A DNA stretch of 63,670 bases, the filler included, from Hyphochytrium catenoides (Eukaryota; Protista; Hyphochytriomycota), in the NCBI GenBank assembly GCA_900088475.1. It is 8 parts of 8 records of this genome, joined end to end, with 100 filler letters (N's around TTAATTAATTAA, not from the genome) between each part and the next. Parts side by side here need not be neighbours in the genome. Positions count along the whole stretch, not along the records: positions 40,069 to 52,807 come from FLMG01002031.1; 7 more parts are not named here. One strand, written 5' to 3'. The position numbers were made by a program, and so were the translations under genes. The notes beneath the pieces were generated by a model, which saw nothing but the letters and a program-made list of their open reading frames with translations, was not told where the DNA came from and did not search any database. Shown one piece after another: positions 39,690-53,050 of this stretch. The number at the start of each line of letters is the position of its first letter. Position 1 is the first letter of the stretch.

Positions 39690-40372
39690 GTACATGTTTC
39701 TNNNNNNNNNNNNNNNNNNNNNNNNNNNNNNNNNNNNNNNNNNNNNNNNNTCTCTCTCTCTCTCTCTCTTTCTCTTTCTCTCTTTCTTTCTCTCCCTCTC
39801 TCTGTCTTTATCTCTCTCTCTCACACACTCTCTCTCTCACACACTCTCTCTCTCTTCTTCTCGTCTCTCCTACTGTTCCTCTCTCTTTCGCGTACCCCAT
39901 CTCTTCCCTCTCCTCTTCGTTCTCCTCTCCTCTCTCTCTTTTCTCTTTGACTCTTCCCACACTTTCGCNNNNNNNNNNNNNNNNNNNNNNNNNNNNNNNN
40001 NNNNNNNNNNNNTTAATTAATTAANNNNNNNNNNNNNNNNNNNNNNNNNNNNNNNNNNNNNNNNNNNNCTTGCCATGACTCCTTCTCTCTCTCCTCTTTC
40101 TCCTCTCTCTCTCGCGCGTCTCTTGGTCTGTTTTGGTCTCTCTCCTCTCTTTCTCTCTTTTTGTGTCTCTTCTTATCCTTTTCTCTCTTCCTCTGTCTTT
40201 TCCATAATTTCTCTCTCGCTGTACCTCTGTCTATTCTGTTCGTCATACATTCTCTCTTTCTTACTCTCTCTCTCTCGCTCTCTTTCTCTCTCTCCTCTCT
40301 GTCGCTCTCCCTCACTCTCCCGCGCTCTCCCGCGCTCTCACACACAAACGCTCTCTCTCTCTCACTACTCAC

Positions 40373-40427
<55 letters not shown>

Positions 40428-40633
40428 CCTGTGTGGTTAGAGCCAAGCGTGTGTTTGAAATATATTAGATAGGGGAAATGGGAGTGTGTGAGTGCGGTGC
40501 TGTGTGTGAGGTCGGGGTATGCTGGTCTTGATGTCTTTGGGAGCTGGCAGGAGACAACCTCGACTTGACCGCATTCTGGAAGCTTTTCTCTCTCTCTCTT
40601 CTCTCTCTCTCTCTCTCTCTCACTCCCTCTCCT

Positions 40634-40691
<58 letters not shown>

Positions 40692-41039
40692 TCTAGTCAG
40701 TGTCTCTTTCTTTCCTCCTCCTCAAAGAGTTGTGCTTGCGCTCCTCTCACCCTTCTAACTCGCCATCGCGTCAGAGAGAAGAGGCAAATCCAGGAGAGGG
40801 GCTGATGATCACCATCGCATCTTAATAGCTGTTTGTCTCTCTCTCTCGCTGGTCCGCTGACTCAGCGGCCGCCTTGTTGCTTCCTCTCGCCACGCCCTCA
40901 GTCTCTCTCTTTCCCTCCACCTTCCGGGTTCTGAGCTGGCGTCTTCCCTCTACTGCAGCGCCGATCATGGCCTGAGAAAGTACATCAAGGCCATCATCAC
41001 GACGTCTCTCTATCATTGAAGTGAGCTTAACAGAGCAAA

Positions 41040-41367
41040 ATGAGGGCTTTTCTCTCTCTTGGTATCCTCTTGCCCCTCCTCCTTTCTTCTCTGAGTTGGG
41101 GTCCGTCTTCTTGTGAGGCAGCAGAGCATAAGAGAGAGCAGAAGGGAGAGAAAGACTCCTCTCTCTCTTCTTCCACTAGACAGGAGAGCACGGAGACGAA
41201 GGTGCAAGCCTACAGCGAGTTCTTTGAGGCAGCGGACAGCGATAAGGATGGATACATCAGAGGCGATGAGCTGGGCAAGGTAGGCAGGCGTCTTCTCTTT
41301 TAAGTTCCTTTCTCTCTTCTCTCTTCTCTCTTCTCTCTCTCTCTCTCTCGCTCTCTCTGTGTTTGTT

Positions 41368-41398
<31 letters not shown>

Positions 41399-41831
41399 TT
41401 CTCTCTTTCTATCTCTCCGTCCTCTCCATTGCTCTCTTTATCTCTTCCTGTCTTCTCTTTCTACGCTACTCCGTATCTCTTCTCCTCTTCCCTTTGTCTG
41501 TCCATCTCTCTCTCTTGCACTTTGATCGATGTCTCACACACACTTTATCGCGTCCTCTCTCTTTATTTCTACCTATCACCCCATCCCTCTCTTTCTCTCT
41601 ATTTTTCTCTCTATTTTTCTCTCTGTCTGTCTCTCTCTTTCTCTCTCCCTTCCTCTCATCGCACGCTGCAGATCCTGGCCAAGGTCGGAGGTCATGACTA
41701 TGACGAGGAAGGAGAGATCGCTCAGGGCGTGGAAGCGGCTCTGGCCAACCTGGACGAGAATCTAGACCGAGCTGTCTCCATATCAGACCTCAAAAGCTAT
41801 TGGAACAAGATTGGTAAGCCTCTCTCTTTCC

Positions 41832-41903
<72 letters not shown>

Positions 41904-42073
41904 GTCTGTCTCTCACTGTTGCCTCTCTCTCTGTCTCTCTCCCTTTTGTACCGCTTGTCGTTAATACTCTTCGTCGGATCGTTCTGCGTGGCACTTCTCT
42001 CGACACTTGTCCATTGCTTTCCCTCAACTTAATTTGCTCTTGTCTTCATGATCCTCTCTCTCTCCCTCTTCTC

Positions 42074-42104
<31 letters not shown>

Positions 42105-44735
42105 TCATCACTTTCTCCTTCTTTCTGGGTCGTTCTCTGATCTCTTTGCATCCCTCTGTCTTCTCTGCCTCTGCCTTTTACCTATTCCTTGCACCATCTC
42201 TCTCTCTCCCTTTTCCCCGTATCGCAGGCTCCGTCTTGACGGTAGAGAACGCTGCTCTCTGGGTAGAGCACGGCCTTCAGCTGCCGACTGTGGCCAAAGT
42301 CTTCCGCTCCCGCGGGATCACGGGTTATGACTTCCCTGTTCTTCTCTCTCGTCCTGAGAGCTTCAAGGAGCTGAAGATTTCCAAAGAGAAGCAGAGGAGA
42401 CTCTATAGGTCCATACATCTCAAGCTCCTGGGCGTGGATAGAGGTGAGAGCCTGAGAGCATGAAAGGAAGAGAGAAACGGAGAGAGAGGAACACACGGGC
42501 GGAGAAGAGAACGGGAAATGCGTCATACACGGCCGGTACATGGCAAGTGGAAGAGCTTTCAAGCAGAGAGGGAGCAGATCGTGGAAGACCAGAGGCAGAA
42601 GAGGCAGATCAAAGTGAGAGAGAGAGGCCAGACCAGCGAGCAGGATTTTGTGAGAGAAGGATTGAGCGAGAGAGACACGGAAAGTTGTTAGGAGGGAGAG
42701 AAGTGGATGGACGAGAAACAGAGGAGTCTCTGTGAACTCTTGATGGTTAAGAGTAACGCCTTGTGTACATGTTTGTTCTCCCTCTGATGGTGCAGATCCC
42801 GGCCCGCCTGAGGACTTTCGCTTTGACTCCAAGAGCTGCACGTCTATTCTTCTCACTTGGAAGTCACCTGCAGACTCTGGAGGCTATCCTATACATAAAT
42901 ACCTGCTGCAGGTGTGAATCGGAGAGAGTTCTCTTCTCCCGGTTGTCTTCTTCTTACTTTGCCTCCTCTCTCAACGTGGGTACGAAGCTACCTTGCTTCT
43001 TCTAGCTTGGCATTCTTTCTGGTTGATTGTCGTGGTCTGTCACTCTCTCCTCTCCCCCTCTCTCTCGCTCTGTCACTCTCTCAGAAGTCTCTTCTGTTAC
43101 CTGTTTCTAAACTGTCCTGTCACTCTCTCCGACCAGCGTCAAACTGAAAGCACTTCACGAGAAGCGTGGGTCACAGTCAGTGAGGACGCGGATACTTCCC
43201 ATTTAGATACAGGTGGGTCAGCGATAGGAGACAGCAACCTGCAGGAGAGGGCGAGAGCGAGAAAGAGAGGCGGGAGACAGGAAGGAAGGAAGCAGAAGAG
43301 AGATTACAGCTGCGAGAGAGCGAAGAGAGAGAAAGGAGAATAAGAATGGGGAAGAACGAGGAGTTGAAGCCTCCAGCCAGCCAGAGACCACTTGAGTGCT
43401 GATCTCACTCTCCTTGTCTCTCTGCTCTCTCTCTCTTTCTGTCTCTCATTGTTACCTTGGCCTCCCGGTCCATCTATCCTGACAGGTCTGCAGCCCGATC
43501 TGTCATATCGCTACCGCGTGCAGGCTTGGACCATAGCAGGACATAGCGCGTTCATAATCTTGGAGAACTGCCTACCAAAGGAGTGTCCCTTCCATCGCCG
43601 GTCTCTCTTCTCCCTCTTCTCTTCCCCGCTCTCTGTTGCCCTTGCACTCATCCTCGCTGCCGTGCTCTTCCTGTTTGGTCCTCCACTTCGAGCTTCTCGC
43701 TCCGGGAGAGAGAAGAGAGAGAAAGAGAGAACTCTTTACGGAAAGAACTCACATAGGACTAGTCAGCCAGTTCTCTCCACCTCTGTAAAGAAGCTTCATG
43801 GCTTACCTCGCGAGAGCTTCGGTTCTAATCACCCTCTCAGTCCCAAAATGCGAGGAGTTGTGGACGACGCTCTAGCAGGAGAGAGAGGACGGCTCCTGAG
43901 TCCCAGCAATTCCGCCCGCCTAGGTCTTTCTTCCGGCTCCGGAGGCGCTTCTACTAGCTTTGCATCAGTGCCTGAGTATGATGCCTGTGAGATCTGTCAC
44001 AAGCGGTTCAAACTCCATCGTATCAAGCATCATTGCAGCGTCTGTACCGCTGTTTTCTGTTCTAAACATGGCTATACGGCCCATCCAGGCTTCACAGACT
44101 GTGGAATACCTGGGAAATGCCTGTGTCAAAGGTGCAGAAGCCTCTCAGTCACTCAGCAGAAGACGCCCGGAACGGCTCACCCTAAGTCAAGCAGTGCTAC
44201 AAAGGAAGAGAGCGCCAACGGTCAGAGCGCTCTGAAAGAGAAAGAGAGCCGAAGCAGCAGCTTGGAGGAAGAGACAGGCAGTAGCCGTATCTCTTCTGTC
44301 CCTCCGCCATCTGTTACCTCGTCTTCCTCCAACCACACGGGGACGAGAGAGAGAGAAGAGGGTGGGACTCCTCCAACATCTTCGCGAATGGACGGCACGT
44401 CAGAAGCAAGTGCCTCCCCAAGGCCCTCCTTTGGCGGGGAAAGTGAATTGAAAGGAGAGAAATCGCTCCTTTCCACTCTCTCAAAGCCCAAGAGAAAATC
44501 TCGGAGAGAAGACCGAAAGACCATGCGCTCTATGGTTCGTCACGTCATCACAAATAGGAGGCTTAGGTACTTTAAGGAGAGAGTGAGTTCTTCGGAGGGC
44601 TTCAGCTCCTCGTCAGAGCCGAGCACGCCGCAAGAGAGGGAAAGAGACAAGAGTCGGGAGACGGGCAGGGCATCTCCGGTAGTCGAAGCGGCCAGAGCGT
44701 TCTTCCCTCTGTCTCCATCAAAGCCTTCGAGCTGA
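41040..44735 (+). CDS. STIM-like type I membrane protein: signal peptide, EF-hand pair, SAM, FN3, TM, FYVE-like Zn finger, Ser-rich/basic tail; exons 41040-41279, 41672-41813, 42228-42443, 42796-42911, 43137-43212, 43486-44735
   Basis: All five introns are GT-AG with matching phases (0,1,1,0,1). EF1 is DSDKDGYIRGDE and EF2 is DENLDRAVSISD. SAM is LTVENAALWVEHGLQLP..AKVFRSRGITGYDFPVL. FN3 is PGPP...ILLTWKSPADSGGYPIHKY...GLQPDLSYRYRVQAW. TM is LSVALALILAAVLFLFG. The Zn finger is CEICHKRF..RIKHHCSVC.AVFCSKH...CLCQRC. Confidence 0.85.
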
Positions 44736-45467
44736 TATCTCTCTCTTTACTTCTTACAGCTCAGCCATCTCTCTCTATCTCTATCTCTGGCTTGGGCTCT
44801 GTTGTGTCTTGAGGACTTTCACTCCTTTCTTCTAATGTCTTAGCCTTCCTGGCCAATGAGGAAGGTCATTTATTTATTTTTGCTCGGTATACGTGCTTAA
44901 GAATAGACCTTGAGGAGTATGTATGGTGAAGCAGGAAGGGATAAGAGGGGAGAGAGGGAAACGCAGGGAAAGAGACAGAGAGAGGGAAAGCGAAAGAACG
45001 AGAGAGAGAGAGAAGGAGAGAAACCTTCCTAGTAGTGCTATCAAGGGAATAAACGTTTTCGCACCCATTGAGAAGTTTACTTGCGGGCCTGCTTATCGTC
45101 TCCCTTTGTCTCTCTTTCCTTCACCTTCTTGAAGAAGAGTCAGACTCTTCTCCAGACGGCAGCCTCTCCCCGCTTTTTATCATTGCGGAAAAAGGAATAA
45201 AGATAAGATCAGGATAAGGCAAGCTCTTGAGCTTTGGCCTATGTTCTGAATGAGCAAGCAAAGTGAGAGAGAGAAAGAGGGAAGGAAAGAGAGCTTGCAT
45301 GGAGTAAGATGCAGGAGAGGCCAGAAGAAGAAGAACATATCAACGCTTACGTCTTCTGACTAACGGGGATGGACGGGAACCAGAACAAATAGCGAGATAA
45401 TAGGAAATAAATTGACGATTAGCTAGTAAGACTCTCCTCTTGTCTGTCTCTCTCTCTCTTTAACTAT

Positions 45468-46661
45468 TTACTTCTTGGCAGCACCACCAGTGGTTCCCAT
45501 GCCAAAGACAGTCTTGAAGGTGTCATAGATCCACCACTGCAGACCAGTGAGGGTACCAATCATAATGATACGAGTGCTCAGACCCTTGGTTAGCAAATTG
45601 CCAACGCCAACCTCGTTGGTGATCTGGCCCAAGCTCTTGCCCTTGTTGCTGGCCTTGCCCATCTGGGAGACAAGAGAGTCTGCTGGGTGAGAGACAATAG
45701 CGCAGATAACGCCTGCCAGGTAACCAGAGGCGAAGGTAATGCCCAGCTGCGTAGGCTTGCCATAGGTCTCCTTAGGGGCAGTGAAGACATTGGTGTAGAA
45801 CATCTCGACACACTTCTCGAAGAAGAAGAACTTTGCCATGGTGTAAGGGATCTGGCGGGACCAGAGAGGAACCAGGGAGCCGAAGGGGAAGCGGGTCTCA
45901 GCAGCGTTTGCCTTCATCTGCGCAAGAGCAGGGCCGAACTCAACAGGGAAAGTGCCCTTAGGGGAAGTCTGGACCTTGACCTTGATCATCTCAAGCGGGC
46001 AGAGAGCGATATCAGCGAAGAACTCAGCGGAAGCGGAACCTGCGAGAAAGAGAGCGTTAGATCAGTTCCTCAAATGAAGGAGACAAGGGGGACGGCAACA
46101 GGGAAGCGTTCTTACCAGCAAGGTAGATGATGCCACGGTACTTGTATGAGTTCTCCTCGCCAGCTACGTTCGAGTAGAGATCCTTGAAGATCTCATAGAG
46201 ACCGAACTTGAAGAAGCCCTGAGCAGAGTATCCAACAGCGGTAGGGAACCAACCCTTCCAGATGGCAGATGATCCTTCCTCAGCCGTGATAAGCTGCAGC
46301 AATAGAGGACAAGAGACAGAGATTAGACTCTTGCTTTTGCTGTTCTCTCTCTCTCTCTCTCTCTTACCTTGAGGCCCTGCATGGTTCCTGTGTATTTCTT
46401 AGGGTCAACTTGCATGTTGCACTTGACGACATCGAGAGGAGTGATCATGGTGTGGGTCAGACCGCAGCTCAGGATACCGGCAATCATGCACTTTCCATAG
46501 TAGGAGTTGGTGTGAGGCACAGGGTGAGCATAGCGAGCATCCCACTGCTTCGAAGAGGTTGCGACGATCCTCTGGCTAAGCGGGCTCTCTTTCTTGTTGG
46601 AGAGCTGTGGCAGGAGAGAGGGAGCCATGAGGCTCTTGAAGCCGACGCTTTGGAAGTTCAT
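45468..46661 (-). CDS. Mitochondrial phosphate carrier (SLC25A3/MIR1 family); exons 46661-46368, 46293-46116, 46039-45468
   Basis: SCGLTH...TPLDVVKCNMQ, GYSAQGFFKFGLYE, EFFADIALCPLE, RQIPYTMAKF, SHPAD, MIGTLTGLQWWIYD. Confidence 0.95.
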
Positions 46662-49600
46662 TGTGCCTCTGTAAAGGGCGAGAAAAGTGTGAAAGACGGA
46701 GCTTCAAAAGCTCTAAATATACGAGGGTAAATGTGTTTATGGTAGAGACGGCTGTGGAGGCGCGGCGCTGTGGAGCTCGCTAGTCAAAAGAGAGGGAGAG
46801 GGAGGAAGGAAAGAGTAGATGGATGGCGCGAGAGAGAAAGCCCGTGGAGGCGTGACCGGTGTTTGTGGCGTGGTGGGCCTGCGAGACAGAGTGAGAGAGA
46901 GAGAGGGAAAGAGAGACATAAGAGAGGGAAAAAAAAGAGAGACAGAGAGACGGAGAGACGGAGCGAGAAAGAGAGAAAGAGAGAGAGAGAAAAAGAGAGT
47001 GAGAGAGGGTGATGGGAGGGTGAGAGACAGACACAGAGAGAGACACAGAGAGAGACAGACAGAAAAAGATAGAGAGAGACAGAGGCCAAGAGAGAGAGAG
47101 AGAGAGAAATAGTCATAGGGAAACAGAGAGAGAAAGAAAGATTGATCAGATTGGCAGTCAGTGGAAGCCCCTCATTTTCCCCTCTCCTGTCACTCTACCC
47201 AATCGTCAACCAGTATCCGGCAGTTCTGTGGGGAATGAATCTTCTGCATTGTTATCTTTAGATATACCACCTCTTGGCCCCCGCACTAACATGTACTTAG
47301 TCTTTCTGGGTAACGTGACCTATAGATATTCCTACCCCCGCGGCCAGGAGGATACAATGCCTTCCGAATATAGGCCGTAGTCTTGATGGTAGACGCTAAC
47401 GGTCAGTATGTTGACGTTATTTTCCAGTGGCAGTCGAGGTTTGGCTCATGGTACAATAGGGCTGTCGGTATTACTACTGACGGACTCTTCGCGCTTAAGA
47501 AGGATGTGAGACTCGCAGGAAAGCATACTACTAGTGGCACCAAGCAAAATACAGAAAGAGTGGCGTAGTAATATCTAGATCATAATGTGTAGCCTGTATT
47601 GTCTGATAATAGTAGTTGTGAGTGAGACACACAACGGTGGTACAACAAGGAACAACAGCACTCTCGCAAATGGATTCCCCAGGAGAGAGCCAGAGCTTCA
47701 TTTTGTCATTTGTTGAGCATATTACAAATAAGTTTCAATGTGATTCTCTTTATCCTGATTAACCATTCAAGAAATCCGAAATGGTTGCATGTCAACTCAA
47801 CGGCTCTTTTGGACGCCAACAAGCCGCTAACGCCACTCTACTAGGAGATAAATCTTTGTGCAGATCGTCTGAAGATTGAGAGGTGGAGATTATTGGATTA
47901 TTGACGATTAGCGGCGCTGACGGATTTCCGACGACTACGTAGATCCTTGCTCAACCTCTGCCAATGCTCTAGGGACTAGACTCAGGTCAGCAAACTTCTA
48001 GGAGGGTGTTATAAAGCAGTGCACGTGAGTTCGCTTCCAAATCCCCCGTGACGGAGAGTGACGCTAAGTTAGGCTAGGAAAGGTATCAGCGGAATAAATG
48101 AATCCCTTGCAGATGGTGGCAAGAGCTTAAGCAATATAAATCGTCTAGATAAGGGAGGGGTTGGATTTCTATCATGGAGTGGTAGGAGCTCAACAGACAG
48201 CCAAGCGCTGGCGCTCTTAGTTGAAAAGTTACGCTTTCCCTTCTGCCCGATGGGGTTACCAACTCCTACGTCGATGTTCGGGTCCCCAACGAGTATCCAA
48301 GATAGGGTAAGCACGCAATGTACTAAGTGCTGACTTTGTTGGCGGCATTGAGATCATCTACGAACACTACAGACGAGAGGAACAACGAGAAAGGAACGAA
48401 CGAACGCTCGAAATGAAGTTCTTACTGCTTGATTTGTGCGTTGGCAAGGATCCCCTTCTTCTTGGCCTAATTGAGGAGGGGACGTTCGCTCATGACGCTT
48501 CTAGGTCATACCTTTAATTACCAGTCTTCCTCTCTTTCTCTTTCTGTTCTATCTCTCTCTTGTTCTCGCCCTCTTTCTGGCTATCCCTCTCTCTGTCCAT
48601 GTGCTTTCTTCCAGCTATCCTCCTCTTTCTCTCTTCCAGCTAACCTCCGGGCGAGTAGCCGATCTTACCATTTTTGCCGAATGGGTCCAGCGGTTGCGGC
48701 AAGCTGCTCGTCTTGAAATCCTGCAGCTGAGGGTCAAGGACAAAAGCCTTTGCCTCTTTCTTCTCAGTGTCTCTTTCCAGTCTTCTACTTCTCTCTCTCC
48801 GTCTCTCCGTTCTCTTATTTCTCCCTCTTACCTACTTGCTGTCCTTTTCATGAGAACAGCTCGCGGACAGAGAGAAGAGAAAATGGGTACGTTCTAACGT
48901 CAGGAGAGCCGTGGTGGCTCTAGCTCAGGATAGCAAAGCGCTACTGCTGTTTTATAAATAATAATGGGATGGGACATCGCCACAATAGAGGAAGGAGCAT
49001 ACGGCGTCCAACTCGGTAGGAGACACAATCGAGATTATTGATGTTGTTGAAGGCAAAGAACCTCTCCCTCCTTCAGAAGGAGAGAAGAGCGAGAGACGAA
49101 GAAAGAGAAGAGAGCATACTGAAGAAGACAGAGAGTGAGCAAACGTTGGACGCGAATAAAGGTTGGGACGACGAGAGAAGAGGTGATGCAGGTTTAGCCC
49201 GAGGACATTGGTGAGTGAGTGAGAGCCATCATTCGCCCAAATTCAGCCTGATATGCCACTTGCTCCTCCTCCTGCCCAGCTGTTCGTCGTAGAGCCAACC
49301 ACCGAAAGCAAAGGTTAACGGAGGTAGATAAGTAGGAAATGGTGTGGGCATTAAAGACCCGCCATGATGATGATGAAGACGATGCGACTTAAAGAGAGGC
49401 GAAGAGACGCCCCCGTGAACGGGAGAGGACAGATAATCTTCTATTATGATGATGATGCATAAAATAGAACGGAAGGAAGAAGCGTTCACCAAGAAGAAGG
49501 TAAGAGGCGCGGCGGCGGAGGAATAGTAAATGATCACGCTTCGCTTGTGAGTGGCTGCGACATTTGGAAGGCGTGTCTTCCTGCTAACGCTAGAGACGAC

Positions 49601-52600
49601 AGCAGTGAGTGCTTGGCGAGGGATCTGCGGCAGTATTACCTCTGTGGCCTCTTCCTAGACTTCCTCCAACAACGCCGACAAAGGTACCTCCCTGTAACTC
49701 TTCCGGGAAGTGCAAAGACTGCACTGATAAAATGCTGGAAGATGGTGATGCGGAAAGATCTGTATCAGTCTTTCAAGTTTCCTCAGTAAAGGTACAAGGA
49801 GGCACATATATGTCGGTGTACTTATGGTGTTGGAGACATCTACTAAGAGCAGAGACCGACTACGCCTGCAGCAGAACACTCCTCCTCCGTCATTAAGCAC
49901 TCGATGTTGTCGTCTTTCTCTAGAGTCGCCAGCAAGATCGCCTTCCAGATGTCTCAGCTACTCACAACCGAAGCCTCCCTATATTTCTTTATATCCCGGA
50001 CGGCCTTCATCATTCCTGGGGGAGCAAAGAAGGCTTCGCATGATCGATCCGCATAGAGATCTATCCCGTGCATACAAGTACCATCCATGTCTTGCTTATG
50101 CACACGGCTACCATCTACTATGCCTTTTCAGACGAACCTTCCACACTACTGTGCAGGCCCCTTTTGCTTAGCCAAGTCACCTGGCATACACGTAAAAATG
50201 TCGCCGCCAGCACTCCCCTCCTCCTCCTCAGGCCCTAACGACGGAAGCTCGCAGATATTGACATGCACCTCCTCCTCCGTAAAATGCATCACTTTTACTC
50301 CCTCCTTCCTCAGTTAGTGCTTGATGATGATGACCAAGCGGAAGCAACAAACAGAATATATTATAGCACACCCGCTAGGCAATATTATCATCTTCATAGC
50401 CTCTTTCTTAGCAAGAATCAACTTCTTTCGTGCCTGTTATCGTCAGTCAGCACATTACTCGCGGCTACATAGGTCCTGGCTATTTAAAGTAGGGTCAAGG
50501 AGAAAGACAGTATCATCTCCAAAATATCTGCATCGTCACGCTTGATTCCCAGTCAGAAGCAGCAAGGCCGAGGAGGGTCGACGTCGAGGTCATGATGATG
50601 ACCCACTCCATGATGTGACGGCAGATAAGGAAGGAGCGAAGACCGCCCAACAGAAACGATCGAAGGTAGGGATGAAGATAATATATATATTATTGCTGAC
50701 GACGCCTTTTCTGCGCTATTTTTGATAGATAAAGAGGGGACCCGGATGATCTGACAACAAATGATTCACTGGCAACAAACAGACATGGGCTGGCAAGCGT
50801 GTGGTTGGCGAGCTCAGCAACAATAAGGGACCACCTGCTTCTTCCACGCCAGAAGTGCCAGCGCGTACGTATCGCTTAGGGTGCTCTGCTGTGCTGTGCC
50901 AAAGTAACAACACAGCCCTATTAAGCCATTTTAGCAAAGAGCCTAGTACCAAGACACGGATAACAGAGTAAGTTCTGTGAGTGTGAGTGAACATGGCGTA
51001 CTGTCTCTCCCTTCCTTTCCCTGGCTCTCCGTCACTGATGATTACTAAGGAGGCTACAACTGGTAATGCCGATGATGATGAATAGTCGCCTTCCGGTTCA
51101 GCGATGGAAAATCTTCTATAAAAAGTTACTCTCTCCGACCGTCGCCTCCTTCCCAGTGCCCTTCGCAACTCTACATTTTCGGTGCGTATAAAGTGACGTC
51201 TCATATATTTTAGTCAGTGACGCAAGAGCTGCATATGAGGTATTAATGATCATGCCTCTCTCCCCATCATGGTTATGGCCATCAACGGGAACAGGATGCT
51301 TCGTGGTTGAGTGCTTATGAGGCAGCAACTGGAGGCTCCAGAGGGCAACAGAATAGTTGTTTAGCATAGCCAAAAGGCACATATCACTAAGGAGAGTTAG
51401 GGAACGTCTCGCGTTCTACCTGAAAGGTTGTTATCCTCTTCCTCCTCCTCCGACTTCCTGGTACCATCCCATTTCGTCCTCTCCGTAGTGTCTCCCTTCT
51501 TCTGCCTTTTGACACTCTTTAGTCTAGGCTTTTGGCCTCCTCGTACAATGAATGGAACACTACCCTGCTCGAAGGCCCGATATTATCTCCTCGTCATATC
51601 ATCTTCTCCTCTCTCCTCTACTTGCCCAGCCCCACGATCTTATTGTTCTTATCTTCCTCAGTTTCTCTCTTTGGTGCACGACCTCTTGCCCGCCACCCGC
51701 ATTCATTTCAATGCCCAGATCCCCTGCCATCTCGGCCTCATCGTCTCTCTGTCCTACGTCTTTGCCTGGGCGGGATAACCTCCTGTTTGCCTGGGCGGTT
51801 ATATCCTCCTATATAGTTCTATCCTCCACTGCTCATAACAGAAGAAGGATGTCTTACTCTTCCCTTAGTCTTGCCCCGTCTCTGTCAGCCTTTGTGCCTG
51901 CTGGAACCATGCTCATCTCTTCTCTGCACCAACAAGTACTAGTTCTATCACCTGCGTCACAGGGCCTCGTTCTCACTCCTTCTCTCCTACGAGTCATCAT
52001 TCTTCCCGGTGTATTAACCTCCTCATCACTATCTCCTCCAACGTCCTTCTCTGAGTATCTGTCTCACCGTCTCCCTCGCCTACCACGCTCTTCCCCCTGT
52101 TGTTAGCTATCGACTCACGGGTAGAGGCTCTACCCTAAGTACTGCAGGCGCCAGGCTCTATCCTACATACAGTTCTTAGCCTATTGGTCATCCTCCTCTA
52201 AGGCGTCTTAGGGTTAGGGTTACCTGCCCCTCCCACTACCGTTTTACAGTGATACGCCTCTCTCGCGCACGTACTACAGTGTAAATCCTATGCCTTAGGT
52301 TTCTGTACAACAACTACAGGCACCGTGGTAGTCTGTTCGATAGGCAGAGTGTCTCATTCGATAGTGGGGTATACAGACCATACCAACTAAACTACAAGGT
52401 AATTGCTATGGGAATTATCGAGTTGCATCGACGACGCACTGAATGTTTGTTCTTATATCACTTTCATTTTGGTCATAGGGGCCACCCTAGGGGGAACACG
52501 ATCGGATGCATGTGCTAATTCATTGCGAAGGACAGCCTCCTCATTGGTTCTGTGCTGTATAATTCAGCGCCGTCGCCTAGGTTACAACACAGTCCACGAT

Positions 52601-53050
52601 GGAGGAATAAGATTAGACTGCAGACCACACTTTACAACACAGTCGGAAAAAAGAAAGCTCACTTGCGGCTGCTGCTGCTTCTTCTCTCTCTGTATCTGTC
52701 TCGTTCTAACTCTGTAAATATCTATTTCTCTATCCATTCTCTTTTTCTCTCTTTTTCTCTCCTCCTCAGCTCGCACTTGCCTCTCTGATCTGACTCTTTC
52801 CTTTCTTNNNNNNNNNNNNNNNNNNNNNNNNNNNNNNNNNNNNNNNNNNNNTTAATTAATTAANNNNNNNNNNNNNNNNNNNNNNNNNNNNNNNNNNNNN
52901 NNNNNNNGTCCCAGACTCGCGCACTATGCTTTCTCTGCCTGGTAGGGAGGATCGTAACTATCCAAGTCCGTACTTTTCTCCTCTATCACTCCTGCGAAGA
53001 CTACTACCTTTCTCACACTGATTATATGCTTTCCTTCATGGATCTTATAG

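What the first reader, a model, noticed from the sequence alone, without database searches (positions are those of the whole stretch)
41040..44735. STIM-like luminal EF-SAM Ca2+ sensor fused to FN3 and a cytosolic FYVE-like finger
Seen: a six-exon model, fragmented in the ORF track, with the order signal peptide, canonical EF-hand, degenerate EF-hand, SAM, FN3, TM, Zn finger, basic tail. Knowledge: luminal EF-SAM followed by one TM is the hallmark of STIM ER Ca2+ sensors. The segment VSISDLKSYWNKIGSVLTVENAALWVEHGLQLPTVAKVFRSRGITGYDFPVL parallels STIM1 ISVEDLWKAW...WTVDEVVQWL...[21 protein letters not shown] (recalled). Unlike STIM, there is an added luminal FN3, and I see no obvious coiled-coil/SOAR region for gating Orai. 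Inference: a store- or lumen-Ca2+ sensor in a protist whose output is membrane tethering or lipid binding rather than classical Orai gating. Whether this architecture is already catalogued is unknown to me.
Basis: partly seen in the sequence, partly recalled or inferred. Interest (0 to 1): 0.88.

Follow-up and report, generated by a model that had tools for sequence, protein, structure and literature searches.

The report
STIM-like calcium sensor with FYVE finger
This protist gene encodes a single-pass membrane protein whose outer (lumen-facing) part is a true relative of the calcium-sensing module of animal STIM proteins, but whose cytosolic part carries a lipid-binding-type zinc finger instead of STIM's channel-opening region; it belongs to a widespread, so far uncharacterised family, which matters because STIM-type sensors were thought to be confined to animals and their closest unicellular kin.

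Summary
Six GT-AG exons (41040-44735, + strand) give a clean 679-aa ORF. The order is signal peptide, canonical EF-hand, second EF-hand, SAM, FN3, one TM, FYVE-type finger, Ser-rich tail with a basic cluster.

No RNA run could be listed. Splicing is supported by comparison: every junction lies in gap-free alignment with relatives read from short (1.9-3.7 kb) contigs, and two further relatives are single genomic ORFs.

An exhaustive search found 105 related clusters. 38 carry all three modules. One is from the stramenopile Phaeothamnion, and a 70-member Atlas cluster is from oomycetes.

The STIM claim passes its tests. An EF2+SAM profile hits STIM2, C. elegans STIM and STIM1 first in the PDB (E 3e-7 to 3e-6). 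A confident model of the closest relative has C. elegans STIM EF-SAM as its best match among 48,161 chains (Z 15.9).

It is not a STIM member in the full sense. An FN3 separates SAM from TM, and no coiled-coil/SOAR region is present. The finger matches only FYVE domains but lacks most PI3P-binding residues and has four extra invariant His/Cys.

Most likely mechanism (inferred): Ca2+ loss clusters the sensor, and the clustered fingers bind a membrane or partner. Orai gating is unlikely, because oomycetes are reported to lack Orai.

The parts
41040..41279 (+). Exon 1: start codon, signal-peptide-like segment (aa 1-22, nt 41040-41105), acidic/Ser-rich spacer, EF-hand 1 with canonical loop DSDKDGYIRGDE (aa 66-77, nt 41235-41270)
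   Evidence: Pfam EF-hand hits at residues 60-79 are sub-threshold because the hand is cut by the intron. Loop positions 1, 6 and 12 are invariant and position 5 nearly so in the family alignment A1.
41672..41813 (+). Exon 2: linker helix and EF-hand 2 (loop DENLDRAVSISD, aa 108-119, nt 41753-41788), followed by the exit helix ...DLKSYWNKIG. This part aligns with STIM's second ('hidden') EF-hand.
   Evidence: The EF2+SAM family profile aligns in one stretch with STIM1/2 residues 59-149.
42228..42443 (+). Exon 3: SAM domain (aa 128-199)
   Evidence: Exon 3 alone has STIM2 EF-SAM 2l5y as its best PDB sequence hit, at a weak E of 0.12. The family SAM profile that includes this exon has the three STIMs as its top hits. 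SAM_2 passes Pfam's cut-off in relatives P0018 and P0014.
42796..42911 (+). Exon 4: N-terminal part of the FN3 domain (aa 200-238)
   Evidence: Pfam fn3 E 6e-4 on this piece alone. fn3 passes the cut-off in P0001. The FN3 part of the model gives Z 13-15 against solved FN3 domains.
43137..43212 (+). Exon 5: middle part of FN3 (aa 239-263)
   Evidence: The alignment across both junctions with P0001, P0088, P0044 and P0016 is gap-free.
43486..43571 (+). Exon 6, first part: C-terminal FN3 strands (YRYRVQAWTIAGHS...)
   Evidence: The Y, W, N/T, G and S positions are conserved in the family.
43626..43685 (+). Single transmembrane segment (aa about 311-330, PLSVALALILAAVLFLFGPP), followed by a basic juxtamembrane stretch RASRSGREKREKER
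   Evidence: Kyte-Doolittle scan and flank charges: 7 K/R after against 2 before.
43986..44135 (+). FYVE-type zinc finger (aa 431-480): CEIC-x9-RIKHHCSVC-x4-CSKH-x4-H-x5-C-x5-CLCQRC
   Evidence: Vps27 FYVE 1vfy E 7e-7. The family finger profile hits only FYVE domains in the PDB. The fold model's top hits are FYVE domains, at moderate confidence. The Pfam FYVE score is below the cut-off. Twelve invariant C/H/F/G columns in 55 family fingers.
44136..44735 (+). Ser/Thr/Pro/Glu-rich low-complexity tail with a basic cluster KPKRKSRREDRKTMRSMVRHVITNRRLRYFKER (aa 597-629, nt 44484-44582) and the stop codon at 44733-44735. The tail is not conserved in relatives, most of which end just after the finger.

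Best explanation
The locus encodes a type-I single-pass membrane protein of a conserved protist family. 

Anatomy (shown). The N-terminal part faces a lumen or the outside. It consists of a STIM-type EF-SAM module, that is an EF-hand pair packed against a SAM domain, which is homologous to the Ca2+-sensing module of animal STIM1/2. One FN3 domain follows. The cytosolic part is mostly disordered and carries a FYVE-type zinc finger.

Proposed mechanism (inferred by analogy with STIM).
1. When Ca2+ is bound, the EF-SAM is compact and the protein is dispersed.
2. When Ca2+ falls in the compartment the EF-SAM faces, most likely the ER or another Ca2+ store, the EF-SAM destabilises and self-associates.
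3. This clusters the cytosolic fingers.
4. The clustered fingers gain enough avidity to hold on to a target membrane (a phosphoinositide-bearing organelle or the plasma membrane) or to a protein partner.

The output would then be Ca2+-dependent tethering or recruitment. It would not be Orai gating through a SOAR/CAD domain, which the protein lacks.

Status of each step. Gene model, domain order, family membership and EF-SAM homology to STIM are shown. Topology rests on sequence rules. Ca2+ binding, the Ca2+-dependent switch, the compartment and the finger's ligand are inferred.
For: Gene model: clean six-exon ORF with canonical splice sites.

Family:
- 105 related clusters found in 1.84 billion representatives.
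- 38 carry EF-SAM, FN3 and TM/finger together; 75 carry FN3 plus finger.
- Family HMMs match the spliced product at E 1.4e-40 for EF-SAM and 1.8e-27 for the finger.
- All exon junctions fall in gap-free conserved alignment.
- Relatives P0013 and P0052 are single uninterrupted genomic ORFs.

STIM homology:
- EF2+SAM profile: STIM2 2.6e-7, C. elegans STIM 5e-7, STIM1 2.8e-6, in one stretch covering hidden EF-hand plus SAM. The next hits, at 3e-5 or weaker, are generic EF-hand proteins that match the EF-hand 2 part only.
- SAM-only profile: the three STIMs at 5e-5 to 9e-5, against 0.017 or worse for other SAMs.
- AF2 model of P0001 residues 25-280: pLDDT 92, pTM 0.85.
- Best of 48,161 PDB chains is C. 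elegans STIM EF-SAM 6pw7: Z 15.9, rmsd 2.4 A, 148 of 161 residues.
- In Foldseek against the PDB it is the only non-FN3 hit in the top 50: E 4e-7, TM 0.72 by target.
- Among the 30 best Swiss-Prot model hits, the well-superposed matches (rmsd about 3.5 A, TM by query about 0.47) to the EF-SAM part are all STIMs.

Ca2+ ligands: EF1 loop positions 1, 6 and 12 are invariant and position 5 nearly so. The Asp residues at positions 1 and 12 of EF2 are nearly invariant.

Topology.

Finger: FYVE domains are the only PDB sequence matches, and FYVE domains lead the fold matches.

No SOAR or coiled-coil Pfam hit in the window's cytosolic part at E up to 1, nor in six relatives at E up to 0.1. The window's cytosolic part is 19% Ser and has Pro/Gly every few residues.

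Background from my own knowledge, not tested here: the STIM1 EF-SAM unfolds and oligomerises on Ca2+ loss; STIM1's polybasic tail binds plasma-membrane lipid only after oligomerisation; single FYVE domains bind membranes weakly and usually need dimerisation.
Against: - No experiment or RNA-seq supports expression or splicing of this particular gene.
- The structure was predicted for the closest relative, P0001 (45% identical to the window's exon 3 in the SAM alignment), not for the window's own protein.
- AF2 was trained on the PDB, which includes STIM EF-SAM, so the packing could be partly recalled.
- The second EF-hand looks more canonical than STIM's hidden one, so Ca2+ stoichiometry and affinity may differ.
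- An FN3 domain is typical of cell-surface proteins. No ER-retention signal is visible, so the compartment is open.
- The finger lacks WxxD. It has RIKHHCS in place of R(R/K)HHCR and CLC in place of RVC, and it is below Pfam's FYVE cut-off. PI3P binding is therefore doubtful.
- The basic tail is not conserved in relatives.
Confidence: 0.6

Rival explanations
1. It is a plasma-membrane (or endosome/vacuole) receptor. EF-SAM plus FN3 face the outside or an acidic store and sense external or vacuolar Ca2+, or mediate adhesion. The FYVE-type finger would serve endosomal sorting or signalling of the receptor, not inter-organelle tethering.
For: FN3 domains are typical of extracellular parts of receptors; all FN3 fold matches are such proteins. 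No KDEL/KKXX-type retention signal is present at the C-terminus. The family is common in oomycetes, where external Ca2+ controls zoospore behaviour and encystment (PMC4820453). From my own knowledge, FYVE domains normally work on endosomal membranes.
Against: The only known proteins with this EF-SAM module, the STIMs, act mainly from the ER lumen. Many relatives come from sequences that look marine, where external Ca2+ is high and constant; this is an inference from the diatom-like members. Nothing here measures localisation.
Confidence: 0.2
2. It is the functional counterpart of STIM in lineages that have Orai but no recognisable STIM. Store depletion would cluster it at ER-plasma-membrane junctions, where it activates Orai or another Ca2+ entry channel through a cytosolic region unrelated to SOAR.
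For: STIM-type EF-SAM followed by a TM. [quoted passage not shown] Family members look diatom-like, and AlphaFold DB cluster hits include entries that I recall, unverified, as prasinophyte proteins. In the diatom-like subfamily a conserved cytosolic segment lies between TM and finger.
Against: No SOAR/CAD or coiled coil. The family is abundant in oomycetes, for which no STIM or Orai homologue was found in nine genomes (PMC4820453), so its function cannot depend on Orai in general. The window's own genome could not be searched for Orai.
Confidence: 0.1
3. The EF-hand pair and SAM are a structural or adhesive module with no Ca2+ switch. The resemblance to STIM would reflect shared ancestry of the fold only, and the protein would be a constitutive scaffold.
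For: Ca2+ binding and switching are untested. The second EF-hand differs from STIM's. Sequence identity to STIM EF-SAM is only 13-19% in the structural alignments.
Against: The Ca2+-ligand positions of EF1 are conserved across 28 divergent sequences: positions 1, 6 and 12 are invariant and position 5 nearly so. The EF2 Asp residues at positions 1 and 12 are nearly invariant. This argues for selection on metal binding.
Confidence: 0.07
4. The six-exon model is an artefact. Exons 1-3 (EF-SAM) and exons 4-6 (FN3-TM-finger) would belong to two adjacent genes or to a pseudogene.
For: No RNA evidence for this locus. Neither this protein nor a close copy is in the protein libraries.
Against: The ORF is clean across five canonical introns. 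Continuous family-HMM and pairwise alignments cross every junction. The same order occurs in 38 independent clusters, including uninterrupted genomic ORFs.
Confidence: 0.03

Closest known systems
STIM1/STIM2 (stromal interaction molecules; EF-SAM structures 2k60, 2l5y, 6pw7)
   Same: Both have a signal peptide, a canonical EF-hand, a second EF-hand and a SAM forming one compact EF-SAM unit, and then a single TM, in type-I topology. Sequence homology holds across the hidden EF-hand plus SAM (E 3e-7 to 3e-6). The fold match is Z 15.9. In this window's protein, though not in most relatives, there is also a basic cluster near the C-terminus, reminiscent of STIM's polybasic tail.
   Different: An FN3 domain sits between SAM and TM. 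There is no CC1 and no SOAR/CAD Orai-activating region. A FYVE-type zinc finger is present instead. The second EF-hand keeps acidic residues at loop positions 1, 3, 5 and 12 and may bind Ca2+. The family occurs in oomycetes, which are reported to lack Orai. The literature I read places STIM's origin at or near the base of animals (PMC7016017) and notes that it is present in animals and choanoflagellates but not detected in diatoms, green algae, early plants (PMC11085791) or oomycetes (PMC4820453).
FYVE zinc fingers (Vps27, Hrs, EEA1, RUFY1, ALFY/WDFY3)
   Same: The eight-ligand CxxC...HHCxxC...CxxH/C...CxxC pattern is present. These are the only PDB sequence hits for the finger profile (E 5.6e-7 to 5e-3) and the leading fold hits. 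As in Vps27, the sixth ligand is His.
   Different: The score is below Pfam's FYVE cut-off. There is no WxxD. The basic motif is R-x-(R/K)-HHC-x-(R) in the family and RIKHHCSV here, in place of R(R/K)HHCR. CxC replaces RVC. Four extra invariant residues (His, His, Cys, Cys) suggest a third zinc site. PI3P binding is therefore uncertain.
Protrudin/ZFYVE27 and other membrane-anchored contact-site tethers (cited from my own knowledge, not tested here)
   Same: An organelle-anchored membrane protein with a cytosolic FYVE domain that can reach a second membrane. This is the kind of output proposed here.
   Different: Protrudin has no luminal Ca2+ sensor and is not related in sequence outside the finger. 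No comparison was run.
Uncharacterised database entries of the same family
   Same: These entries share the architecture: CAM9753437.1 from Phaeothamnion confervicola; AlphaFold DB cluster representatives A0A7S3VAB9, A0A484E9J9, K8F6C2 and A0A830HDT3, labelled 'EF-hand domain-containing protein' or left unnamed, and A0A6S8T827, labelled 'FYVE-type domain-containing protein'; and an ESM Atlas cluster of 70 oomycete proteins carrying fn3 and SAM, automatically named 'Calmodulin'.
   Different: None is annotated as STIM-like. The window's protein is at most about 36-45% identical to any of them. It has a compact FN3 without the long insert seen in most relatives, and a long extra tail.

Membership tests
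STIM family | Signal peptide and type-I single-pass topology with the sensor outside the cytosol | tested here: met
   Hydrophobic N-terminal segment at residues 1-22 with small residues before the likely cleavage site. One TM at about 311-330. K/R count is 2 before and 7 after. This rests on sequence rules only; no dedicated predictor or experiment was used.
STIM family | Canonical EF-hand followed by a second, pairing ('hidden') EF-hand | tested here: met
   EF1 loop is DSDKDGYIRGDE. The EF2 region aligns with STIM residues about 59-80 within one contiguous profile match. EF2 here keeps more ligand-like residues than STIM's.
STIM family | SAM domain specifically related to the STIM SAM and packed on the EF-hand pair (EF-SAM fold) | tested here: met
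   With the SAM-only profile the three STIMs are the top hits, about 200-fold or more better in E-value than other SAMs. The model of relative P0001 gives Z 15.9 and rmsd 2.4 A over 148 residues against 6pw7. The result is transferred to the window's protein through E 1.4e-40 against the family HMM.
STIM family | TM follows directly after the SAM | tested here: not met
   A complete FN3 domain (about 95 aa here, longer in most relatives) lies between SAM and TM.
STIM family | Cytosolic coiled-coil CC1 plus the SOAR/CAD Orai-activating domain | tested here: not met
   No SOAR or other helical-domain Pfam hit in exon 6 at E up to 1, nor in six relatives at E up to 0.1. The cytosolic part is Ser/Pro/Gly-rich. 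Its longest Pro/Gly-free stretch outside the finger is 36 aa, which is the basic cluster. No dedicated coiled-coil predictor was run.
STIM family | C-terminal polybasic lipid-binding tail | tested here: inconclusive
   The window's protein has a basic cluster at aa 597-629, but it lies 50 aa from the end and is absent from most relatives.
STIM family | Ca2+-dependent unfolding/oligomerisation and activation of Orai | not testable with these tools
   Needs biochemistry and cell biology. Only this piece of the genome is available, so Orai could not be looked for.
FYVE zinc finger (PF01363) | Eight zinc ligands in the FYVE spacing and overall FYVE fold | tested here: met
   C431, C434, C447, C450, C455, H458, C477 and C480 are invariant or nearly so in 55 family fingers. 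Only FYVE domains are hit in the PDB by sequence, and FYVE domains come first by fold (model pLDDT only 72).
FYVE zinc finger (PF01363) | Score above Pfam's gathering threshold | tested here: not met
   19.3 bits against a cut-off of 27.8 for the window. Relatives score 13.8-21.8 bits.
FYVE zinc finger (PF01363) | PI3P-binding motifs WxxD, R(R/K)HHCR and RVC | tested here: not met
   There is no Trp before the first CxxC. RIKHHCS stands in place of R(R/K)HHCR, and CLC in place of RVC. The family consensus keeps more basic residues (KRxRHHCxRC) than the window's copy.
Fibronectin type III domain | Seven-strand beta sandwich with the conserved W, Y and Y-x-Y/W core | tested here: met
   fn3 is above the Pfam cut-off in P0001: 27.5 bits against 25. 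Z 13-15 and rmsd 1.4-2.4 A to solved FN3 domains. The window's pieces align without gaps to P0001.

The most novel reading that the evidence does not exclude
The EF-SAM Ca2+-sensing module did not arise at the base of animals. It would belong to an older, widely distributed eukaryotic family of store or lumen Ca2+ sensors, found in stramenopiles including oomycetes, possibly green algae, and the unidentified host of this window. The ancestral output of that family would be FYVE-type membrane tethering. STIM would then be a derived branch that lost the FN3 and the finger and gained the Orai-gating coiled coils. In Orai-bearing algae that lack STIM, this family could be the missing store sensor.
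Probability: 0.2. Interest if true: 0.9.

Novelty: new variant of a known kind. Interest (0 to 1): 0.74.

Why it matters
The papers I could read treat STIM as an innovation of animals and their closest unicellular relatives (PMC7016017; PMC3194816). They note that diatoms, green algae and early plants have Orai channels without any known store sensor (PMC11085791), and that oomycetes have neither STIM nor Orai (PMC4820453).

The family found here carries a real STIM-type EF-SAM in front of a TM and is spread over many protist lineages. This matters in three ways:
- It gives a concrete candidate for Ca2+ sensing inside stores, or outside the cell, in these organisms.
- It shows that the EF-SAM module is older or more mobile than thought.
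- It offers a natural experiment in which the same sensor is wired to a different output, a FYVE-type finger in place of a channel activator.

The idea is directly testable with standard tools: Ca2+-dependent oligomerisation of the recombinant luminal part, localisation before and after store depletion, lipid overlay or liposome binding of the finger, and knockouts in a tractable diatom or oomycete.

Tried and rejected
- Word-indexed protein search, exon 6: found nothing. Low-complexity Ser-rich words swamped the candidate list.
- Word-indexed protein search, full-length family alignment: returned only P0001, P0029 and two unrelated FN3 proteins. These two blanks say nothing about the family; the exhaustive HMMER search found it.
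- Whole EF-SAM profile against the PDB: swamped by multi-EF-hand proteins such as secretagogin, calbindin and calmodulin, and uninformative about STIM. Cutting the profile to SAM only or EF2+SAM solved this.
- RNA-seq check of junctions: no run could be listed.
The closest relative was modelled instead.
- The third zinc site could not be checked on coordinates, because models are not exported.
- Host identification through the neighbouring phosphate carrier: gave only a hint, with an amoebozoan at 82% identity and fungi at 75-79%. I rejected my first guess of a coccidian.
- The P. infestans 'STIM-1 homolog' mentioned by Zheng and Mackrill is XP_002902235.1, 1208 aa. I could not tell whether it belongs to this family.
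- Collins and Meyer 2011 (PMC3175768) is not held.
- Literature searches for EF-SAM with FYVE, for STIM with EF-SAM and Toxoplasma, and for FYVE, oomycete, EF-hand and fibronectin type III found no description of this architecture. A search for STIM-like, Orai and algae matched no paper on the term 'STIM-like' among the 15 listed.

Full report
**1. Is the thing there?**

I read 40950-44800 and rebuilt the exon model in a script. The exons are 41040-41279, 41672-41813, 42228-42443, 42796-42911, 43137-43212 and 43486-44735 on the + strand. All five introns begin GT and end AG and are 225-414 nt long. They are full of (TC)n arrays, which explains why the ORF track is fragmented. The joined CDS is 2040 nt and encodes 679 aa, with a single stop at 44733-44735. 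An in-frame TGA lies just upstream of the ATG.

The layout is as described:
- a hydrophobic N-terminal segment at residues 1-22;
- EF-hand 1 with the canonical loop DSDKDGYIRGDE (66-77);
- EF-hand 2 with loop DENLDRAVSISD (108-119);
- SAM (about 128-199);
- FN3 (about 200-292);
- one TM (about 311-330), with 2 K/R before it and 7 after;
- a Cys/His finger (431-480);
- a Ser-rich tail with a basic cluster (597-629).

Pfam on the separate exon pieces gives only sub-threshold EF-hand, SAM_2, fn3 and FYVE hits. That is expected when domains are cut by introns.

**2. Is the splicing right?**

No RNA run could be listed for this stretch, so there is no direct evidence. The comparative evidence is good.

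- An exhaustive HMMER search with exon 6 found 105 related cluster representatives. None was a self or near-identical protein; the best was P0001 at 36% identity, E 2.7e-19.
- Local phmmer with the three parts of the spliced product shows that 38 of the 105 carry EF-SAM (E < 1e-10), FN3 and TM/finger together, and 75 carry FN3 plus finger. Many of the rest are N-terminally cut contigs.
- In a MAFFT alignment with eight full-length relatives, each of the five junctions falls inside conserved, gap-free alignment.
- Family HMMs match the spliced product continuously over residues 56-197 (E 1.4e-40) and 420-489 (E 1.8e-27).
- P0001, P0018 and P0006 come from short JGI/IMG contigs, and P0016, P0014 and P0057 from Logan assemblies; all six are 1.9-2.9 kb. 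P0082 is an NCBI protein on a 3.7-kb contig.
- P0013 and P0052 are single uninterrupted ORFs on genomic contigs.

A two-gene artefact is therefore very unlikely.

**3. Is the EF-SAM STIM-like?**

Sequence evidence:
- Exon 3 alone has STIM2 EF-SAM (2l5y) as its best PDB sequence hit, but only at E 0.12.
- I aligned the EF-SAM parts of 28 relatives (A1). The whole profile was swamped by multi-EF-hand proteins.
- A SAM-only profile that includes the window's exon 3 (A2) hits STIM1 2k60 (5.1e-5), C. elegans STIM 6pw7 (8.5e-5) and STIM2 2l5y (9.4e-5). The next SAMs, Shank2, Caskin and SAMD5, are at 0.017 or worse and need a gap that the STIM alignments do not need.
- A profile of EF-hand 2 plus SAM (A6) hits STIM2 (2.6e-7), C. 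elegans STIM (5e-7) and STIM1 (2.8e-6). Each is one contiguous stretch covering STIM residues about 59-149, that is the 'hidden' EF-hand, its exit helix and the SAM. The next hits, at 3e-5 or weaker, are generic EF-hand proteins that match the EF2 part only.

Structure evidence:
- The luminal part of the closest relative (P0001 residues 25-280, alignment A3 of 26 sequences) was predicted with pLDDT 92 and pTM 0.85.
- VIA-align against 48,161 PDB representatives puts C. elegans STIM EF-SAM first: Z 15.9, rmsd 2.4 A, 148 of 161 residues, model residues 1-161. Every other row shown is an FN3 match.
- Foldseek against the PDB lists the same chain as the only non-FN3 hit in the top 50: E 4e-7, TM 0.72 by target.
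- Against Swiss-Prot models, the well-superposed matches to residues 1-157 (rmsd about 3.5 A, TM by query about 0.47) are C. elegans STIM, mouse STIM1 and STIM2, and Drosophila Stim.

Caveats. The model is of a relative, not of the window's protein. AF2 has seen STIM EF-SAM in training.

Conservation of metal ligands. In EF1, loop positions 1, 6 and 12 are invariant and position 5 is nearly so. In EF2, the Asp residues at positions 1 and 12 are nearly invariant. This argues for selection on metal binding.

**4. What is not STIM-like?**

- A full FN3 lies between SAM and TM. fn3 is above the Pfam cut-off in P0001, and the fold match to solved FN3 domains is Z 13-15.
- Most relatives have a long low-complexity insert inside the FN3. 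The window's protein, P0001, P0088, P0044 and P0016 do not.
- The cytosolic part has no SOAR or other helical-domain hit. It is 19% Ser with frequent Pro and Gly.

The protein therefore fails two defining features of STIM: TM directly after SAM, and CC1-SOAR. It should not be filed as a STIM. It is a different architecture built on a homologous sensor.

**5. The finger**

- Exon 6 hits the Vps27 FYVE domain at E 7e-7.
- A profile of 55 family fingers (A5) hits only FYVE domains in the PDB: Vps27, ALFY, Hrs, EEA1, RUFY1 and LM5-1, at 5.6e-7 to 5e-3.
- A moderate-confidence model (pLDDT 72) has FYVE domains as its first seven fold hits, all with E above 0.001.
- All Pfam FYVE scores are below the cut-off.
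- The PI3P-binding motifs are mostly missing: there is no WxxD, RIKHHCS replaces R(R/K)HHCR, and CLC replaces RVC.
- Besides the eight canonical ligands, four more residues are invariant in all 55 sequences. These are the first His of HHC, a His five residues after the CxxH, and two further Cys. The second His of HHC varies. I read this as a possible third zinc site that would reshape the usual PI3P pocket. I could not check it on coordinates.

**6. Distribution and what is known**

- The only named relative is CAM9753437.1 from Phaeothamnion confervicola, a stramenopile alga.
- The ESM Atlas holds one matching cluster of 70 proteins, all Oomycota, carrying fn3 and SAM_2 and automatically named 'Calmodulin'.
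- AlphaFold DB cluster representatives with the same luminal fold (TM by query 0.75-0.84) are labelled only 'EF-hand domain-containing protein' or are unnamed. From memory, and unverified, two of these accessions belong to prasinophyte green algae and one to a downy mildew.

So the architecture is already in databases, but it is unannotated.

In the literature I could search, I found no description of it. What the papers I read say:
- PMC3194816 found no STIM or Orai homologue in apicomplexan and other protozoan parasites, but notes both in the choanoflagellate Monosiga.
- PMC4820453 found no STIM or Orai in nine oomycete genomes. It dismissed one P. infestans BLAST hit (XP_002902235.1, 1208 aa) as sharing only a SAM.

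**7. Host**

The library searches returned no self or near-identical hit for either gene of this piece. The convergent neighbour on the minus strand (about 45468-46661) is a mitochondrial phosphate carrier. Its best named relatives are the amoebozoan Dermamoeba algensis (82%) and fungi (75-79%). This hints at an amorphean host more than at a stramenopile, but it does not settle the question.

**8. Mechanism**

Shown:
- a type-I membrane protein by sequence rules;
- a STIM-homologous EF-SAM with conserved Ca2+ ligands;
- an FN3;
- a cytosolic FYVE-type finger;
- family-wide conservation of that order.

Inferred, by analogy with what is established for STIM1 and for FYVE domains (my own knowledge): loss of Ca2+ destabilises EF-SAM and drives self-association. 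Clustering multiplies the weak affinity of single fingers, much as oligomerisation enables STIM1's polybasic tail to hold the plasma membrane and as dimerisation enables FYVE domains to hold PI3P membranes. The protein would then tether or recruit to a target membrane or partner. The compartment sensed (ER, acidic store or outside) and the finger's ligand are open.

Orai gating is unlikely as the general function. There is no SOAR, and the family thrives in oomycetes, which are reported to lack Orai. It remains possible in diatoms and green algae.

**9. Verdict**

The feature is a new variant of a known kind: a STIM-type sensor wired to a different output. It belongs to a broad family that is present in databases but, as far as I could find, undescribed. 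A Ca2+-signalling or protist cell-biology specialist would find it notable, because it moves the EF-SAM module well outside the lineage where it is thought to have arisen. It also supplies a testable candidate store sensor for organisms that have none.

Noticed in passing
window 45468-46661, minus strand: A convergent neighbouring gene encodes a mitochondrial phosphate carrier (SLC25A3-like, Mito_carr). It has at least three exons, seen as ORF pieces 45468-45989, 46057-46302 and 46323-46661. The best named relatives of the last exon are Dermamoeba algensis (Amoebozoa, 82% identity) and fungi (75-79%); the top unnamed environmental sequences reach 84%. This hints that the host is not a stramenopile.
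   Followed up: partly
window 40251-40424, 40587-40687, 41311-41417, 41820-41941, 42054-42104, 46883-47107: Long, imperfect (TC)n and (GA)n dinucleotide arrays of 26-113 copies fill the upstream region, introns 1 and 2 of the STIM-like gene, and the region beyond the phosphate carrier. They create the many spurious Ser/Leu- and Arg/Glu-rich ORFs in the six-frame list.
   Followed up: partly
window 43986-44135 (aa 431-480) and alignment A5: Besides the eight canonical FYVE zinc ligands, four further residues are invariant in all 55 family fingers: the first His of HHC, the His of ...TAH, the Cys of ...DC and the Cys of ...GKC. The second His of HHC varies. This suggests a third His2Cys2 zinc site that is not present in classical FYVE domains.
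   Followed up: partly
relatives P0018, P0082, P0006, P0003 and others, between FN3 strands: Most family members carry a low-complexity insert of 40-150 residues inside the FN3 domain. The window's protein, P0001, P0088, P0044 and P0016 have a compact FN3.
   Followed up: no
diatom-like relatives P0002, P0005, P0008, P0012, P0013 (consensus): A subfamily has a conserved cytosolic segment between TM and finger (…RFKRAS…LPFPxxWxGxN…G…IP…D…A…GL.GY…) and a longer, interrupted hydrophobic region that might be two membrane passes. Neither feature is present in the window's protein.
   Followed up: no
window aa 292 and 297 (nt about 43569-43586) and relatives: One or two Cys residues lie just before the TM on the luminal side (ENCLPKEC here; ...KKKC... 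or ...KGC... in relatives). They could form an intermolecular disulfide.
   Followed up: no
whole piece 40069-52807: Neither gene of the piece has a self or near-identical hit in the protein libraries searched, and no sequencing run could be listed. The source genome seems absent from the collections used here.
   Followed up: partly
PMC4820453, supplementary table: A 2016 survey of oomycete Ca2+ signalling recorded a weak human STIM1 BLAST hit in Phytophthora infestans: XP_002902235.1, 1208 aa, 33% identity over 11% of the query, E 6e-4. It was dismissed as sharing only a SAM domain. It may or may not belong to the family described here.
   Followed up: no
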